NCBI RefSeq assembly: GCF_000142905.1
Contig: NW_013657640.1
Location: forward strand, 1-57,140
Direction: 5' to 3'
Length of the DNA: 57,140 bases
Source of the DNA: Thecamonas trahens ATCC 50062
Taxonomy: Eukaryota; Protista; Apusomonadida
Shown: positions 3,867-48,448 of the stretch, one piece after another
Layout: the number at the start of each line of letters is the position of its first letter
Position numbering within the stretch: the first letter of the stretch is position 1
The notes under the pieces: model-generated
Databases searched by the model: none
Told to the model about the DNA's origin: nothing
What the model saw: only the letters and a program-made list of their open reading frames with translations
Program-made: the position numbers and the translations under genes

Positions 3867-4659
3867 TTACTCATCGTCGTCCTCGTCATCATTCGGGTTG
3901 TACGGCTTGAACTCCATCTTGTAGTGCGCCTTGCGCCGCCGCTCAAACTCGGCTTTCCGCCGCGCCACCTCCTCTGGATCTTCCTCCACCTCGTCATCGT
4001 CATCGTCGTCATCGCCAATCTCAGTCCACACCGGTGCCTCTTCCCACTGTTCCGCCTCGGGCGTTGCCGACGTCTGCCCCACGTGAGCAAGCGCCTCGCT
4101 GATCGACGCCGCCTGCGACTCGAGTTGCTGAGTCTGAGGCACAGCCGGCGGCGGCGGCGCAGTTTCCAGCCCTGCGTTTGCCGCCGTGTTCCCTCGCACC
4201 GCCTTGCCCTCACCGTCTTCTGCCAGCGCGCCTGACGCCCGCACCTCGTCATCGTCCTCCATGTTGTAGTTGTGATACGGCGTGTCCGGCTCCTCAATCT
4301 TCATCGTCGCCGACTTGTTCTCCTCATTGTACGCCAGGTTCTCTTCATCCCACACAATGCCCCTACCCATACTCCCACCAACCGCCATTCCCCCGCCAAT
4401 CCCAATCACTCCTCACATCAGTCCTGCACCAAAGCCCTCTTCCCCGAGCACGGCCCTTCCTGAACAATGCCTCCTCCACCCCCATGCCCCCCCCCCCTCC
4501 CCCCCTCCCCCCCCCCCCCCCCTCCCTCCTCCTGCCCACATACTTGCGCTTCTTATTGCACCCTTCATTTGCACCCGCCTCGTCCCCATGCTCTCGCTTG
4601 AGAATGCCCTTGGTCACCGGCTTGGTCGCCGCCTCGGGTGTCACCTCGCGCACGTCCAT
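3867..4659 (-). CDS. PPP1R2: Protein phosphatase 1 inhibitor-2 (Glc8/IPP-2); exons 4659-4544 and 4362-3867
   Basis: KGILK motif in exon 1; a GTATGT..AG intron joins in frame to KGIVWDEENL, MKIEEPDTPY and FERRRKAHYKME. Confidence 0.92.
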
Positions 4660-4724
4660 TGCTCACCGGAACCGAGCGAGTCAAGTAGCCACCCACACAC
4701 ACCCATCCGTCTCTTGCCGCCGTC

Positions 4725-5840
4725 ATGCTCGCTGCCACCGCGGGCATGGCATACACCTCGGGTCTTGCTGCAGCCCTCTCGCCATGTGTTGTCGTCCTCA
4801 TTCCGCTGGTCCTCTTCCGCTTCTCTGGTCACATCGCTTCCAAGCCGCTGCTCCCGTCGCACACAAAGCACGGCGCCCGCCCGTCGCTGCAGCTTGTCGC
4901 CGATCTCGCCGGCTTTGCTCTAGGCTTTCTGACCGCGTACGTGGCCTTTGCCTCGGCTGTTGCGTACGCGCTCACCTCGTCGGCGGCAGGTGGCGTGACC
5001 GCAGCCATGGGCATGATCTTTGCGGTCTCGGGCGCGCTCTCGCTCGCGGATCGCATGCAGCCGCTCGATGTGCCGCTGCTCTCATGGCCGCCGGCGGTCG
5101 GCGTCGCCTTTGCCGCCCTCGTCTCCATCAACCCATGCACCATTCCGTTCCTCGCCGTCGTCATCTCGTATTCGGCCCGGTCAGCGGCCGTGGCGCTCGT
5201 CGCCTTTGGCTGCGGCCTTCTCACCCCGGCCATCACGTGTGCGCTCATGGGCTCGGGCGTCGTTGCTCTCGTCAAGCGCCACGGTGCTGCTCTCCACTAT
5301 CTCAACCGCGCCATGTCGGCCGTTCTCATCGCCGCTGGCGGCTGGCTTGTCTCCTCGGTCCACACGTACTCGACACTCGAGGCCGCCATCGTTGCTGCTG
5401 CTGCTCCCGTCGTCGCTGCTTTCGTCCTCTCCGCCTTTGCCGCCGATCTTCCACCAAACACTGGCCTCTACCGCGACGCCAAGCCGCTGTTGGTCCTTCT
5501 GGCCGGCGCGACTGTCGTCGTCTTCTGCGGCCTCGTGGCCGTCGCCTCGCCTCCCCTCGGCCTTGCCTCCCACAACTCGATGCTCCACGCTGCGCTCACT
5601 GTCAACGACGCAGCCGAGAGCTCGACATCGCCTGGCGGTGGCTGCATCGATCTCTCACTCCTGCCATCCTGCACGCCGTGCGCCGTCATCCGCATCGCCG
5701 CCCTTGCCGCCACCGCCGTCCTCACCCTCCTCGTCTACGCGCTCCACGTTGTCCATCGCGGGACACACGACCTAGTCGTCGCTGTTCCGCCACACATCCC
5801 TTCCACAGGCCATAGCCCCATCGACGCCCACACAATGTAA
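4725..5840 (+). CDS. CcdA/DsbD-beta-like polytopic membrane protein with C-terminal extension carrying CxxC
   Basis: GLAAALSPCVVVLIP (C21) and INPCTIPFL (C138) match the two Pro-Cys motifs of the CcdA/DsbD TM domain; FALGF, FGCGLLTP and LNRAMSAVLIAAG follow in the expected order; extra TM segments and CTPC (316-319). Confidence 0.72.
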   Translation: MLAATAGMAYTSGLAAALSPCVVVLIPLVLFRFSGHIASKPLLPSHTKHGARPSLQLVADLAGFALGFLTAYVAFASAVAYALTSSAAGGVTAAMGMIFAVSGALSLADRMQPLDVPLLSWPPAVGVAFAALVSINPCTIPFLAVVISYSARSAAVALVAFGCGLLTPAITCALMGSGVVALVKRHGAALHYLNRAMSAVLIAAGGWLVSSVHTYSTLEAAIVAAAAPVVAAFVLSAFAADLPPNTGLYRDAKPLLVLLAGATVVVFCGLVAVASPPLGLASHNSMLHAALTVNDAAESSTSPGGGCIDLSLLPSCTPCAVIRIAALAATAVLTLLVYALHVVHRGTHDLVVAVPPHIPSTGHSPIDAHTM

Positions 5841-5972
5841 TTCCGTTGCCAATCCGCACGAGCCCTGCACGTGACCTCTGTCGCCCCTCCACCACTAGGC
5901 CGGTGCTCGCACACGCGAGCCGAAACCGCCCCCAACCTCCGCCACCCCTCGCCTAGCGCTGTCGAGCACACC

Positions 5973-7459
5973 ATGGCCCACACTACCAAGTGGTACGCCA
6001 TGACGGCGGCAGTCATGCTTGGGACGGTCCTTCTCTCGCTCCTTGGTTCGACGCCCAACGCGTTCAATCGGTTCAACGACGCCCTCAAGGCCAATGGCTA
6101 CTCCGACTCGTACGTCAATCTGGTGGCCTCGTGGGGCCTCGTCGCTGTCAACCTCAACTTTGTCATGGGCGCTCTCAAGGACCACATCGGCGGACGCAAG
6201 GGCTTCCTCATTACTGCTGCACTCGGCACTGTTCTTGGTGCCGGTGGCTACATGATCATGTCGCTGGTCACCTCCACCAAGGCCGGCCCGCTCCTCTGCT
6301 TTGCCTTTTTCCTCGTCGGCCTCGGCAACGGCGCCTGCTTCATCGTCGCCATGTCGGTCGGCGTCTCGCTCTCGCCCACGGGCTCAGGCCCGTCGGTGGC
6401 GCTTGTCGGCGCGGCCATGGGCCTCTCCGTTGCCTTTACCGTCAACTCGGTCAACGTTTACGGCGATGCGGGTGGGTGCGCCGGCGATCACTGCTGGGCC
6501 TCGTGGATGCGCCTGCTGGCCCTCTTCTGCCTCGTCATGCAGGGCGGCGGGACGCTGCTGCTGTTTTTCTCTCCGAGGCCAACTACCCGCATCTCCTCTC
6601 TGTTGAAGACCGCGAGACCGAGAGCCTGGTGGCAAAGGGCGATGTCGGTCCGCCAGGCGTCGGCGGTGACGACTTTGCCTCGGTCCCGCTCGACATCAAC
6701 TCGGCTGATGCCGCGCCGATTTCCGCCCCCTCGAAGCCCTACGTCTCGCCGTCGTATGTCCACGAGCCGATTTCATTTCTCGAGGCGCTCGTTGTTCTTA
6801 AGCACCCGTACTACCTCTTCCTGTTTGCCGTCGAGTTTATCGGCTTCTTCTCGGCCATTTTCATCCTCACCCAGGCCTCGCAGATCTGGGACGACTTTGC
6901 CCCGCACGGCTCGTCCGAGCTGGGCGGCCAGATTCTCTCGGTCTTTTCGTACTTTAACGTCGTCGCCGCCCTCGCCGCCGGCTCAGCCAACGAGATCTTG
7001 TCGCGCCGCCGCATTTGCCGGACCGCCACCTTTGCCGGCATCACCTTTGTCATCTGGGGCGCGCTCTTTATCTTTGGCGGCATTCTCGCCGCTACCACAG
7101 GCAACGCGCCGTCCAAGGCTGTCCAGGTCATATTCTTCCTCGTTCTCACCTCAGACGCTGTCCTCTTCGGCGCGATGCTCGTCCTCTTCCCCACCATCCT
7201 TGCCGAAGAATACGGCTACGTGGCCTTTGCCAAGATCTTCGGCCTCCTCAACCTCTCGCCGGCGGCGGCCTCATTCATTGCGCCGCAGCTGACAGGCGCC
7301 ATCTCCAAGGCCGCCGGCTCGTACAACTCGCTCTTCTTTGCCATCGGCGCTCTCATGGCTCTCGGTGGCATCGGCCTCATCTTTTTCCGCAACACCAAGC
7401 CGCTCAACTACATGGCGTCGACCCGCGCCCGCCTTGCCTCGCTCAACGCCAAGGCGTAA
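5973..7459 (+). CDS. MFS transporter (nodulin-like/Mch1/OFA-type), one frame break at ~6564-6568
   Basis: About 6 TM helices in ORF 5871..7292 (GALKDHIGGR motif-A-like) and about 6 TM in ORF 5990..7459 (FPTILAEEYG..F...FG); one added T joins them. Confidence 0.85.
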
Positions 7460-46000: not shown

Positions 46001-46475
46001 NNNNNNNNNNNNNNNNNNNNNNNNNNNNNNNNNNNNNNNNNNNNNNNNNNNNNNNNNNNNNNNNNNNNNNNNNNNNNNNNNNNNNNNNNNNNNNNNNNNN
46101 NNNNNNNNNNNNNNNNNNNNNNNNNNNNNNNNNNNNNNNNNNNNNNNNNNNNNNNNNNNNNNNNNNNNNNNNNNNNNNNNNNNNNNNNNNNNNNNNNNNN
46201 NNNNNNNNNNNNNNNNNNNNNNNNNNNNNNNNNNNNNNNNNNNNNNNNNNNNNNNNNNNNNNNNNNNNNNNNNNNNNNNNNNNNNNNNNNNNNNNNNNNN
46301 NNNNNNNNNNNNNNNNNNNNNNNNNNNNNNNNNNNNNNNNNNNNNNNNNNNNNNNNNNNNNNNNNNNNNNNNNNNNNNNNNNNNNNNNNNNNNNNNNNNN
46401 NNNNNNNNNNNNNNNNNNNNNNNNNNNNNNNNNNNNNNNNNNNNNNNNNNNNNNNNNNNNNNNNNNNNNNNNNNN
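46001..46475. other. Assembly gap (475 N)
   Basis: Run of N. Confidence 1.
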
Positions 46476-46519
46476 ACTTTACCCCACCACCACCCCCTTC
46501 CCTCCACTCCCCTCCCACA

Positions 46520-48448
46520 ATGGGAGGAGTATGCGGGCGACCAAGAGCAAGAGCAGATGATGATTACTCATACAATGTAGTCTCGCGTTCTGACATGGCT
46601 CCCACTGTACGTACCAACCCCCTCCCCCCCCCCCTCCGACCACTTCTGCTCCGCTCTCTCTCTCTCTCTGCCTGTACCGCACCCTCCGACCGCCACCCGC
46701 AATGCACAACCATACCAGCGTACACACAAGTAGCTACATATGGAGAGTATTGGCAGTGGTGTGAATGGTTGTCACACAGACTACGTGTAGGCATGAGGTT
46801 GGTATTGTGTACACACACCCCCCTCCCCCCTTTGTCCCTGCTTCTTCTTCGTTGACTGGTCGGTGTCGGTACGGGTGCCACTGCCGCTGTTCTGGCACTC
46901 TGCTTGATCTGTCTGTCCTCTTGCCTGCCTGCTCTCTTGCCTGCTCTCTGGCTACTCTCTGGCTACTCTCTGGCTACTCTATCTGATCTGCATGTTCTTT
47001 TGTCTGCACTCTGGCTGCTCTTCCCGCTCTCTACCTGTTCCTCAGCTACTCTACCTGATCTGCCTGCCCGGCTACCTCGCCAGCTCGACCCGCTCGATGT
47101 CGGCAAAAGTGGGAGTCATCGACATGATACTCACAACTCCCCTCCCCATCTCTCCATTCTGTGTACAGGGAAAGAGGAAGCGCGGCCGCGGGAAGAGACA
47201 CAAGCCGCTGCCTGAAGCTAGTGACAAGTACCGCATCCTTCCGCGCAAAGTCGGAGAGGGTGCATATGGTGAAGTCTTTGAAGCCATCGAGAAAGCCACG
47301 GGTGAGTCGGTGGTCATCAAGACCATCCGTCCAGATAAGGCCAATCCGGTCAAGCTGCGATCGGAGATCGAGATGCTCAAGTTGCTCGCTGATGGGCCGA
47401 ACATTGTCCAACTGCTGGACACGGTCCAGGACTCCAAGACTGGCGTCCAGATGCTGGTCTTTGAGCTCGTCGACGCGCAGTACTACAAGGCTGCTTACGC
47501 CGTCATGAACTACAACGACATGCTGGTGTACATGTACAAGACGCTACTTGCACTCGCGTACACGCACGACCGCGGCGTCATCCATCGTGACATCAAAGGC
47601 GGCAACATCCTCTTTGACGTCGAGGCACACAAGCTGCGCCTCATTGACTGGGGCTTTGCTACCTTTCACTCGCCGCGCACAGTCCACCACGACTTTCCAG
47701 GCACTCGCTACTACAAGGCGCCCGAGCTGTTCCTCCGCCTCAAGTCGTACGACTACGCTTGTGACATGTGGTCGCTCGGCTGCGTCCTCGGCATGATCCT
47801 CTTCCAGCGCAACCACTTTCTCAAGGCCAAGCACAACACAGACGAGGCCCAGATGATTGCCATCGCCCGCGCCCTCGGCACAGACGACTACGCCACGTGG
47901 CTCAAAGCTGCCAAGCCCCCCATGGCCGCTTACTTTCCCGTCTCTGCCCTCAAGGCCGCAAAGTGTCCCGCAGAGCGCCAGTCGCTGTGCGACCTCTTTG
48001 GCTCCGAAGACCACAACGGGCACCTAGTCCGTGACGACGCCGTAGACTTGCTCGAGGGCCTCCTCCGCTGGGATCCTGCAGACCGCCTCACCGCCAGCCA
48101 AGCCCTTGCATCACCCATTTTTGCCCCGCTCCGCGCTCGCGACAACCTGGACACTTCGACCACCAACACCACCAACACATCGCGCTCAGACTCAAACTCG
48201 TCTATCATCAGCCCGCAGTCGGTTGTGCCCATGGTCCAGAAGCGCGAGCTCACTGGCCCGGCCGCCTGCCACCCCTCTGGCTCTCAGACCTCTACACCAT
48301 CGAGCCTATCGATTCCCTCGGCTCGTCGTCGTCGTACTCATCTTCGGACTCGGTCTCCTCCACCATCTCAGCCGGCGACGTCTCCTTCAATCGCGATGCC
48401 ATGGAGACTGACTCCAACTCGTACGCTTCGTTCACCTCGTCATCATAG
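46520..48448 (+). CDS. Divergent CK2-alpha-like Ser/Thr kinase; exons 46520-46606 and 47169-48448, probable frame break near 48257
   Basis: GEGAYGEVFEA, GPNIVQLLDTV, HRDIKGGN, KLRLIDWG, RYYKAPEL, YDYACDMWSLGC; GTACGT..CAG intron joins an MGGVCG exon in frame. Confidence 0.82.

What the first reader, a model, noticed from the sequence alone, without database searches (positions are those of the whole stretch)
4725..5840. Bacterial-type CcdA/DsbD transmembrane reductant transporter in a eukaryotic nuclear locus, fused to an extra CxxC module
Seen: an intronless ORF with both Pro-Cys motifs (SPC21, NPC138) spaced as in the CcdA/DsbD-beta fold. The first TM starts at residue ~5, so there is no evident transit peptide. 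Further TM segments follow, with a loop carrying C307 and C316-T-P-C319. Known: CcdA/DsbD relay electrons from cytosolic thioredoxin across bacterial and thylakoid membranes, and eukaryotic members are chiefly plastid proteins; the carrier moving reducing equivalents across the ER membrane is an open question. Inference: this may be a self-contained trans-membrane disulfide relay of the endomembrane system or plasma membrane in a non-photosynthetic protist, possibly acquired horizontally.
Basis: partly seen in the sequence, partly recalled or inferred. Interest (0 to 1): 0.8.

Follow-up and report, generated by a model that had tools for sequence, protein, structure and literature searches.

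The report
DsbD-like membrane thiol relay in Thecamonas
This gene of the heterotrophic protist Thecamonas trahens encodes a nine-helix membrane protein of the DsbD/CcdA electron-transporter superfamily with a small extra cysteine loop facing away from the cytosol; it belongs to an undescribed subfamily shared with tiny DPANN archaea and a few plastid-free protists (one without mitochondria), so it probably carries reducing power across a non-organellar membrane.

Summary
Window 4725-5840 (+) is an intact, intronless 371-aa ORF with S-P-C21, N-P-C138, C307 and C316-T-P-C319.

The CcdA/DsbD assignment holds only at profile level. Pfam finds nothing with the single sequence. A 70-member family profile hits Thermus CcdA (5VKV) at E 9e-16. 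hhalign gives 99.6% against canonical CcdA and 95.7% against E. coli DsbD. Both Pro-Cys cysteines are invariant in 70/70 sequences.

The organism is Thecamonas trahens. The public model AMSG_12154 hides this gene by fusing it to the downstream MFS transporter.

The extra Cys module is not a Thecamonas fusion. C307/C316/C319 are invariant across a subfamily found in DPANN archaea (Woesearchaeota, Nanobdellota, Altiarchaeota) and in scattered eukaryotes: Paulinella, Paratrimastix, mitochondrion-less Blattamonas, and environmental sequences. A CPR-type sister branch also exists.

The positive-inside rule gives N-out, 9 TM, with the Cys loop on the non-cytosolic side, where DsbD carries its gamma domain. 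Six of 19 archaeal loci have a cytoplasmic CPHC thioredoxin gene directly adjacent. Thecamonas uses haem lyases (System III), and no presequence exists.

Most likely it relays electrons from cytosolic thioredoxin to the lumen or outside. Localisation, substrates and the role of the loop (redox or metal) are untested. The direction of transfer between archaea and eukaryotes is unresolved. No other note of this scan mentions it.

The parts
4725..5840 (+). Complete intronless gene, 371 aa plus TAA stop: DsbD/CcdA-superfamily membrane protein with 9 predicted TM helices
   Evidence: ORF list. 100% identical to residues 1-353 of public model AMSG_12154. 137 family representatives in the exhaustive HMMER search. 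AF2 pLDDT 82.9, pTM 0.80.
4725..5363 (+). DsbD/CcdA-like 6-TM core (residues 1-213), two inverted 3-TM halves
4779..4787 (+). S19-P20-C21, first redox cysteine, inside TM1
   Evidence: P20 and C21 invariant in 70/70. Aligned with the 'SPC' of Thermus CcdA and the 'TPC' of E. coli DsbD.
5130..5138 (+). N136-P137-C138, second redox cysteine, inside TM4
   Evidence: P137 and C138 invariant in 70/70. Aligned with 'TPC' of CcdA and 'SPC' of DsbD.
5373..5546 (+). TM7-TM8 hairpin (residues 217-274) that returns the chain to the non-cytosolic side
   Evidence: AF2 helices 217-239 and 248-274. The K/R-rich L7-8 loop is cytosolic across the family. Weak colinear alignment to the TM7/8 region of DsbD.
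5547..5681 (+). Non-cytosolic acidic loop (residues 275-319) with H283, H288, C307 and C316-T-P-C319. The CxxC caps the N-terminus of TM9.
   Evidence: The loop has mean D+E 4.6 against K+R 1.8 over 70 sequences. C307/C316/C319 are invariant in the C-terminal module alignment. H-x4-H and C-I-D are specific to the eukaryotic clade. No PDB or Pfam match for the module.
5673..5747 (+). TM9 (about residues 317-341)
   Evidence: AF2 helix 317-352. Hydropathy segment 315-344.
5748..5837 (+). Cytosolic C-terminal tail
   Evidence: The tail is the most K/R-rich segment of the family, mean 4.06. P356, H357, T361, H363 and H369 are conserved with P0001, so the tail is coding.
4660..4724 (.). 65-bp divergent spacer to the inhibitor-2 gene on the minus strand. 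It leaves no room for an upstream targeting exon.
   Evidence: Minus-strand ORF 4363-4659 begins MDVREVTPEAATKPVTKGILKR. Pfam IPP-2 hits 3867-4409. In-frame TAG at 4686-4688.
5784..5966 (+). Stretch removed as an 'intron' in the public model AMSG_12154. It contains this gene's last 18 codons, its stop codon and the intergenic spacer. Probably an annotation artefact.
   Evidence: Mapping of P0002 onto the window. Exon 2 starts 2 codons before the MFS gene's own ATG at 5973. No family member has an MFS domain.

Best explanation
The gene encodes a divergent member of the DsbD/CcdA superfamily of transmembrane thiol-disulfide electron transporters. Its predicted topology is N-terminus outside, nine TM helices and a cytosolic tail. 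I infer that the two invariant Pro-Cys cysteines in TM1 and TM4 (C21, C138) alternate between a disulfide and dithiols. They would take electrons from a cytosolic thioredoxin and expose them on the other side, as shown for DsbD and CcdA. Two additional helices (TM7-8) bring the chain back to the non-cytosolic face. There a short acidic loop carries C307 and C316-x-x-C319 at the N-terminal cap of TM9, in the position where DsbD carries its thioredoxin-like gamma domain. I propose that this loop is a built-in minimal acceptor that passes the electrons on to lumenal or surface substrates. In Thecamonas the membrane is most likely ER, another endomembrane or the plasma membrane, not an organelle. 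Shown here: superfamily homology, cysteine conservation, sequence-based topology, absence of a presequence, and thioredoxin gene linkage in archaeal relatives. Inferred: the electron flow, the redox role of the loop and the localisation.
For: Homology: single sequence vs PDB has CcdA 5VKV as top hit with both PC motifs in register. Family profile vs 5VKV E 9.3e-16. hhalign vs canonical CcdA 99.6% and vs E. coli DsbD 95.7%. 26/70 members hit Pfam DsbD_TM on their own. Language-model neighbours are CcdA clusters at 0.90. Foldseek top hit is CcdA at prob 0.99. Catalytic residues: C21 and C138 in 70/70, C307 in 69/70, and the CxxC in all complete eukaryotic and all 33 DPANN-type sequences. Topology: K/R-rich L1-2, L3-4, L5-6, L7-8 and tail, against K/R-poor N-terminus, L2-3, L4-5, L6-7 and an acidic Cys loop. 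This agrees with DsbD, whose TM1 follows a periplasmic alpha domain (PMC3322552). Redox context: a 112-129-aa CPHC thioredoxin without signal peptide or TM lies directly adjacent in 6 of 19 archaeal loci, co-oriented 2-12 nt upstream in four, and 4 kb away in a seventh. Not for cytochrome c or plastids: the genome has two haem lyases and no other DsbD_TM or DsbD_2 hit. In-frame stops lie 5-25 codons upstream of the ATG in the window and in all six eukaryotic homolog loci checked, one a poly(A) transcript. Homologs occur on 0.3-0.8-Mb contigs of Blattamonas nauphoetae, which has no mitochondrion (PMC10703272).
Confidence: 0.58

Rival explanations
1. Same DsbD-like electron-transporting core, but the C-terminal Cys/His loop is a metal-binding knuckle (Zn, Cu or Fe) that is structural, a docking site or a sensor, and not a redox relay. 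Electrons would go directly from C21/C138 to a separate lumenal or external thioredoxin-fold partner, as in CcdA.
For: There are three conserved cysteines, an odd number, plus H283-x4-H288 in eukaryotes, and His-Cys plus four closely spaced cysteines in DPANN forms. CPR-type members dispense with the CxxC. Canonical CcdA needs no built-in acceptor (PMC3322552).
Against: A CxxC at the N-terminal cap of a helix on the oxidising side of a membrane is the usual setting of redox-active pairs (my knowledge of thioredoxin, DsbB and VKOR). The histidines are not conserved outside the eukaryotic clade. No metal-binding family matches the module.
Confidence: 0.2
2. It is not a redox protein but a small-solute or metal-ion exporter of the wider LysE/DsbD-related transporter superfamily, with the cysteines and histidines lining a metal pathway.
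For: DsbD belongs to a superfamily that also holds metal and amino-acid exporters (discussed in papers listed; not examined further here). The Cys/His-rich outer loop fits. One archaeal locus each has a P-type ATPase or an ArsP permease nearby.
Against: The best matches at every level are DsbD_TM and CcdA, not LysE or NicO families. The two strictly invariant Pro-Cys motifs, one in each half, are the DsbD/CcdA signature. Thioredoxin is the only functionally suggestive recurrent neighbour; small methyltransferase-domain genes also recur, in 4-5 neighbours.
Confidence: 0.07
3. It works in the mitochondrial inner membrane, supplying reductant to the intermembrane space for cytochrome c/c1 maturation or other thiol chemistry.
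For: Classical CcdA serves cytochrome c maturation, and eukaryotic CCDA is organellar (PMC5526843). Thecamonas has mitochondria.
Against: Thecamonas has two haem lyases, that is System III. No presequence exists, and there is no room for one. Homologs exist in mitochondrion-less Blattamonas (PMC10703272).
Confidence: 0.05
4. The ORF is the first exon of a CcdA-MFS fusion protein, as in the public model AMSG_12154, and the Cys module serves the transporter.
For: The public model joins them with GT...AG boundaries at 5784 and 5966.
Against: The ORF has its own stop, and its tail beyond the supposed donor is partly conserved in P0001. Exon 2 starts 2 codons before the transporter's own ATG, and the MFS_1 match begins near that Met. 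None of the homologs carries an MFS domain, and P0001 is followed by unrelated minus-strand genes.
Confidence: 0.05

Closest known systems
DsbD (E. coli thiol-disulfide exchange protein), beta-gamma part
   Same: Two Pro-Cys cysteines in TM1 and TM4 of an inverted-repeat core. TM1 starts on the outer side. Two further TMs after the core return the chain to the outer side, where a CxxC element sits. hhalign 95.7%, E 1e-8, colinear over family columns 9-248 and DsbD residues 163-423. Architecture as described in PMC3322552.
   Different: No alpha domain and no thioredoxin-fold gamma domain (Pfam empty). Instead there is a 35-45-residue loop with C...CxxC and an extra ninth TM with a cytosolic tail. 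It occurs in DPANN archaea and protists, not Proteobacteria.
CcdA (Thermus thermophilus 5VKV; Archaeoglobus 2N4X; plastid CCDA)
   Same: The 6-TM core and both redox cysteines. Best sequence and fold match among solved structures. Thioredoxin as the presumed cytoplasmic donor.
   Different: CcdA has only the six core TMs and hands electrons to a separate thioredoxin-like protein for cytochrome c maturation. This protein has three more TMs and its own outer cysteines. It separates from canonical CcdA with 100/100 support. It also sits in a genome that uses haem lyases.
ScsB / other DsbD-superfamily classes
   Same: They show that the superfamily repeatedly recombines the membrane core with different outer redox modules (PMC3322552).
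   Different: ScsB has large periplasmic alpha and gamma domains and a diagnostic Lys eight residues after the first Cys, as described in that paper. At that position this protein has L29 (read from the translation), and there is no such domain here.
The unidentified ER-membrane component of the mammalian cytosolic thioredoxin-reductase-dependent reductive pathway
   Same: [quoted passage not shown] The predicted topology and chemistry of this protein would fit such a role.
   Different: That factor is defined in mammals. This family was found only in a few protists and its localisation is unknown. The link is an analogy, not an identification.

Membership tests
DsbD/CcdA superfamily (Pfam DsbD_TM PF02683 clan) | Significant sequence-profile similarity to the DsbD transmembrane domain | tested here: met
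   Not met by the single sequence. Met at family level: 26/70 members hit PF02683, best 8.5e-9. Profile vs 5VKV E 9.3e-16. hhalign 99.6% vs canonical CcdA and 95.7% vs E. coli DsbD.
DsbD/CcdA superfamily (Pfam DsbD_TM PF02683 clan) | One conserved cysteine preceded by proline in TM1 and one in TM4, plus a downstream proline | tested here: met
   P20-C21...P27 and P137-C138...P141. P20, C21, P27, P137 and C138 are invariant in 70/70, in register with CcdA and DsbD.
DsbD/CcdA superfamily (Pfam DsbD_TM PF02683 clan) | Fold of two inverted 3-TM repeats with broken cysteine-bearing helices | tested here: inconclusive
DsbD/CcdA superfamily (Pfam DsbD_TM PF02683 clan) | TM1 enters from the non-cytoplasmic side | tested here: met
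   Positive-inside statistics over 70 sequences. This is prediction only, not experiment.
DsbD/CcdA superfamily (Pfam DsbD_TM PF02683 clan) | Accepts electrons from cytoplasmic thioredoxin and reduces an outer partner | not testable with these tools
   The only support is indirect: an adjacent CPHC thioredoxin gene in 6/19 archaeal loci.
CcdA sensu stricto | Consists of the six-TM core only | tested here: not met
   Three further TM helices and a conserved Cys loop. Separated from canonical CcdA at 100/100.
CcdA sensu stricto | Serves System I/II cytochrome c maturation | tested here: not met
   The genome encodes two haem lyases, System III. Homologs occur in mitochondrion-less Blattamonas.
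DsbD sensu stricto | Periplasmic alpha (Ig-like) and gamma (thioredoxin-like) domains flanking an 8-TM beta domain | tested here: not met
   No thioredoxin or other domain in the N- or C-terminal parts. The alignment to DsbD does run into TM7/8, with low confidence.

The most novel reading that the evidence does not exclude
This subfamily is a self-contained DsbD-like conduit that brings cytosolic thioredoxin-derived electrons into the secretory pathway lumen, or to the cell surface, of certain eukaryotes. That would make it the first eukaryotic, non-organellar transmembrane disulfide relay. It is shared with, and possibly exchanged with, DPANN archaea.
Probability: 0.25. Interest if true: 0.85.

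Novelty: new variant of a known kind. Interest (0 to 1): 0.62.

Why it matters
DsbD/CcdA proteins are the textbook way in which bacteria and plastids move reducing power across a membrane. Outside plastids, eukaryotes are not known to have them. How reductant crosses the ER membrane is an acknowledged gap (PMC7197872, PMC5751730).

This gene gives a concrete, testable eukaryotic candidate. It has the right predicted topology. It sits in a plastid-free protist, and it has homologs in a eukaryote that also lacks mitochondria.

It also defines an undescribed architecture of the superfamily: the core, then two TMs, then a mini Cys loop, then a TM. Its distribution is odd, covering DPANN archaea, a CPR-type sister branch and a handful of unrelated protists. 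That bears on gene exchange between ultra-small prokaryotes and eukaryotes.

It will not by itself identify the mammalian factor, because the family was not found in animals.

Practically, the public Thecamonas annotation hides the gene inside an 'MFS' model, and that model should be split.

Tried and rejected
Searches and tests that led nowhere:
- Single-sequence Pfam and NCBIfam searches found nothing useful.
- The word-indexed homolog search was swamped by low-complexity candidates. It returned only 1 hit for the single sequence and 5 for the profile.
- The search for related loci with the full family alignment failed for lack of a conserved stretch. A DPANN-only alignment worked.
- pdb_via_wide returned only generic helical hairpins for residues 243-355.
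- The 'atlas' fold library was unavailable.
- The C-terminal module alone matched nothing in PDB (best E 0.2) or Pfam.

Phylogeny:
- The first quick tree placed the eukaryotes nested inside Woesearchaeota.
- I rejected that reading after an AU test. The test found a constrained tree, with all prokaryotic members as one clade, that was 48.9 lnL better than the free tree.
- In the careful tree the relation is a polytomy. Neither eukaryote monophyly (p 0.47) nor DPANN monophyly (p 0.34) is rejected.

Explanations rejected:
- Contamination: the gene is on a 338-kb contig with native GC3 and eukaryotic neighbours.
- A plastid or mitochondrial role.
- The MFS fusion.

Literature searches for CcdA+Thecamonas, CcdA+Preaxostyla and DsbD+DPANN returned no paper.
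Full report
**1. The observation**

Window 4725-5840 (+) is an uninterrupted ORF of 371 codons ending in TAA. An in-frame TAG lies 13 codons upstream of its ATG.
- S19-P20-C21 (nt 4779-4787)
- N136-P137-C138 (nt 5130-5138)
- C307 (nt 5643-5645)
- C316-T-P-C319 (nt 5670-5681)

An AlphaFold2 model built on a 70-sequence alignment is confident (pLDDT 82.9, pTM 0.80). Its first helix starts at residue 2. A six-helix core ends near residue 211. Three more long helices follow at 217-239, 248-274 and 317-352.

**2. The organism and the gene model**

An exact look-up shows that the first 353 residues are identical to the N-terminus of AMSG_12154 / XP_013755494.1 of Thecamonas trahens ATCC 50062. That entry is an 835-aa 'uncharacterized / MFS profile domain-containing' protein on a 338-kb contig.

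Mapping the public model onto the window shows that it removes 5784-5966 as an intron. This skips the ORF's last 18 codons and its stop. It then resumes two codons before the ATG (5973) of the downstream MFS transporter.

I regard the fusion as an annotation artefact, for three reasons:
- The tail beyond the supposed donor site is partly conserved in the homolog P0001, at P356, H357, T361, H363 and H369.
- The MFS_1 match starts close to the transporter's own Met.
- No homolog carries an MFS domain, and P0001 is followed by unrelated genes on the other strand.

Upstream, the inhibitor-2 gene runs on the minus strand. Pfam IPP-2 hits 3867-4409. A first-exon-like ORF ends at 4659 and begins MDVREVTPEAATKPVTKGILKR. 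That leaves a 65-bp divergent spacer and no room for a targeting exon.

The ORF's GC3 (0.77) matches its neighbours at 0.83 and 0.74. The gene is single-copy in the 28.7-Mb assembly.

**3. Is it CcdA/DsbD?**

The single sequence hits nothing in Pfam or NCBIfam. A six-frame scan of the genome with PF02683 or PF13386 also finds nothing. The only hint at that level is a weak phmmer hit to Thermus CcdA (5VKV, E 0.0074) with both Pro-Cys motifs in register.

An exhaustive HMMER search of 1.84 billion representatives found 137 relatives, 37 of them below 1e-30. With a 70-member alignment (A2) the relationship becomes firm:
- The profile hits 5VKV at E 9.3e-16.
- hhalign against canonical CcdA-type sequences gives 99.6%, E 2.8e-24.
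- hhalign against E. coli DsbD gives 95.7%, E 1e-8.
- 26 of 70 members hit Pfam DsbD_TM on their own.
- Language-model neighbours are CcdA clusters, score 0.90.

The invariant columns are G13, P20, C21, P27, P137, C138, F161 and G205.

**4. The extra module is a family feature, not a local fusion**

Nearly all relatives share the same layout: the core, then two TMs, then a loop with C...CxxC, then a last TM, then a basic tail. Conservation is as follows:
- In a 23-sequence alignment of the C-terminal module, the only invariant columns are C307, C316 and C319.
- C307 is present in 69/70 sequences.
- The CxxC is present in every complete eukaryotic sequence, in 33/33 DPANN-type sequences and in 7/7 'other' sequences, but in only 4/15 of a CPR-type branch. 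Those CPR-type sequences often have just three cysteines.
- DPANN forms add a His-Cys at the end of TM8 and a third cysteine, giving CxxCxxC.
- The eukaryotic clade instead has H283-x4-H288 and a C-I-D motif.

The module matches nothing in PDB (best E 0.2) or Pfam.

**5. Topology**

Over 70 sequences the K/R-rich segments are L1-2 (2.5), L3-4 (1.2), L5-6 (2.3), L7-8 (2.0) and the tail (4.1). The N-terminus, L2-3, L4-5 and L6-7 have 0.01-0.3. The 35-residue Cys loop is acidic, with D+E 4.6 against K+R 1.8.

This gives N-out, nine TMs and C-in, with the Cys loop on the non-cytosolic side. The orientation agrees with DsbD, where a periplasmic alpha domain precedes TM1 and eight TMs lead to a periplasmic gamma domain (PMC3322552).

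The hhalign alignment to DsbD continues colinearly past TM6 into the TM7/8 region, though with low per-column confidence. The layout is therefore best described as DsbD beta-gamma-like, with the thioredoxin-fold gamma domain replaced by a mini Cys loop plus an anchoring helix.

**6. Who has it**

A reference-genome scan with the prokaryotic sub-alignment returned 20 loci. Nineteen are labelled as archaeal MAGs and one as Paceibacterota. The archaeal labels are Woesearchaeota, Nanobdellota/Nanoarchaeota, Altiarchaeum/Altiarchaeales, three 'uncultured Methanosarcinales' and one unclassified archaeon. The scan used one short peptide pattern, so it is biased towards that type.

Other named members are Nanohaloarchaeota, and Dojkabacteria in the CPR-type branch. 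In 201 sampled genomes of the Woesearchaeota phylum, only 9 have a full-length member.

Eukaryotic members:
- Thecamonas.
- Paulinella micropora.
- Paratrimastix pyriformis.
- Two paralogs in Blattamonas nauphoetae, on contigs of 0.3-0.8 Mb. The Paratrimastix gene is on a 1.4-Mb contig.
- An EukProt transcript.
- P0009, on a 24%-GC contig with deoxyhypusine synthase, proteasome, Tom22 and Ras genes.
- P0012, on a transcript with an AATAAA signal and a poly(A) run.

Every eukaryotic locus I could read has an in-frame stop 5-25 codons upstream of the ATG. The short N-terminus without a presequence is therefore a clade feature.

**7. Phylogeny, with a correction**

A first quick ML tree nested the eukaryotes inside Woesearchaeota. 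An AU test then showed that a constrained tree, with all prokaryotic members together, was 48.9 log-likelihood units better. The quick search had been poor, so that nesting cannot be claimed.

A careful search on 47 balanced rows gives:
- the family against canonical CcdA, 100/100
- DPANN plus eukaryotes, to the exclusion of the CPR-type branch, 100/98
- a main eukaryotic clade that includes Thecamonas, 100/99
- a Preaxostyla clade, 100/99
- a polytomy among these and the DPANN lineages

Neither eukaryote monophyly (p-AU 0.47) nor DPANN monophyly (p-AU 0.34) is rejected. The safe statement is that the eukaryotic proteins belong to the DPANN-type subfamily. Direction, number and age of transfers are open.

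**8. Functional context**

- In four Woesearchaeota/Nanobdellota-type loci, a 112-115-aa thioredoxin-fold gene lies 2-12 nt upstream on the same strand. It has a CPHC active site and no signal peptide or TM.
- In two further loci the same protein is the immediate downstream neighbour on the opposite strand.
- In a seventh locus it is 4 kb away.
- Among the other neighbours, small methyltransferase-domain genes recur in 4-5 loci, with no evident link to redox function.

This fits a cytoplasmic donor for the membrane protein. It holds for archaea only, and for a minority of loci.

In Thecamonas the flanking genes, inhibitor-2 and an MFS transporter, say nothing. The genome encodes two haem lyases, that is System III. 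Blattamonas has lost mitochondria altogether (PMC10703272). Cytochrome c maturation is therefore not the job.

**9. Mechanism proposed**

Shown here:
- superfamily membership
- invariant core cysteines
- the conserved outer cysteines
- the predicted topology
- the absence of targeting signals
- the archaeal thioredoxin linkage

Inferred:
- Cytosolic thioredoxin reduces the C21-C138 disulfide.
- The core then switches to outward-facing, as described for DsbD and CcdA.
- The electrons pass to C307 and C316-C319 in the loop that caps TM9, and from there to lumenal or surface substrates.

In a eukaryote the archaeal 'outside' corresponds to the lumen of the secretory pathway or the cell surface.

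The main rival is that the loop binds a metal. It has an odd number of cysteines, histidines in eukaryotes, and His-Cys plus four cysteines in DPANN. In that case the core would feed a separate partner. I cannot separate these two readings with the tools at hand.

**10. Relation to what is known, and novelty**

The closest known systems are DsbD (beta-gamma part) and CcdA. It is a member of their superfamily, but of neither family in the strict sense. It is not CcdA sensu stricto: it has nine TMs, its own outer cysteines and no link to System I/II. It is not DsbD sensu stricto: it has no alpha or gamma domains.

I found no paper linking CcdA or DsbD to Thecamonas, Preaxostyla or DPANN. UniRef's automatic names for the Preaxostyla proteins do recognise a 'cytochrome c biogenesis protein transmembrane domain', so the domain has been seen by machines but not discussed.

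A membrane protein is required for the thioredoxin-reductase-driven reductive pathway of the mammalian ER, and it is presumed to act like DsbD (PMC7197872). This family was not found in animals, however, so it is a parallel and not the missing mammalian factor.

I rate it a new variant of a known kind, with moderately high interest.

**11. Limits**

- Nothing was tested for expression, localisation, redox activity or metal content.
- No model coordinates were available.
- Labels for environmental sequences rest on contig features.
- The search of this scan's earlier notes found nothing on this family elsewhere.

Noticed in passing
window 4725-7459: Public gene model AMSG_12154 (835 aa) joins the DsbD-like ORF to the downstream MFS transporter through a 183-nt 'intron' (5784-5966). 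That intron contains the ORF's stop codon. The transporter has its own ATG at 5973.
   Followed up: yes
window 6534-6577: The MFS gene changes frame across a 44-nt stretch (GTCATG...CCGAG). The public model treats it as a very short intron. It could also be a sequencing frameshift.
   Followed up: partly
window 3867-4659 (-): Protein phosphatase inhibitor-2 gene in two exons. The first-exon ORF starts at 4659 with a KGILK (SILK-type) motif and is separated from the IPP-2 Pfam part by a poly-C/G tract at about 4480-4525. Its ATG is only 65 bp from the DsbD-like gene's ATG, so the two genes share a tiny divergent promoter region.
   Followed up: partly
window 46001-48000: GC content drops to 0.44, against about 0.62 elsewhere in the window.
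   Followed up: no
L008-L011, L015, L026 (archaeal loci): A distinct small CPHC thioredoxin (TSxTCPHCP...SVPTFII, basic C-terminal tail) is adjacent to the DsbD-like gene in Woesearchaeota/Nanobdellota-type MAGs. It looks like a dedicated two-gene redox module.
   Followed up: partly
G003:C126:22532-23419, G086:C3:8197-9138, L026:5001-5917: Some archaeal copies are interrupted. One internal TAA occurs in the second Altiarchaeum copy and one in a Woesearchaeota-phylum genome. The KatS3mg002 copy is split into two ORFs. These may be pseudogenes or assembly errors.
   Followed up: no
P0055, P0074, P0075, P0078, P0079, P0084, P0089 (CPR-type branch, e.g. Dojkabacteria relative P0070): This branch has lost the CxxC but keeps the C307 equivalent, leaving exactly three cysteines. 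That suggests the single loop cysteine is the most indispensable part of the extra module.
   Followed up: partly
P0004, P0007, P0013, P0018: Several eukaryotic members, including Paulinella micropora at 672 aa, are 490-670 aa long. They have large insertions between the core and the CxxC, or long tails, and no Pfam match.
   Followed up: partly
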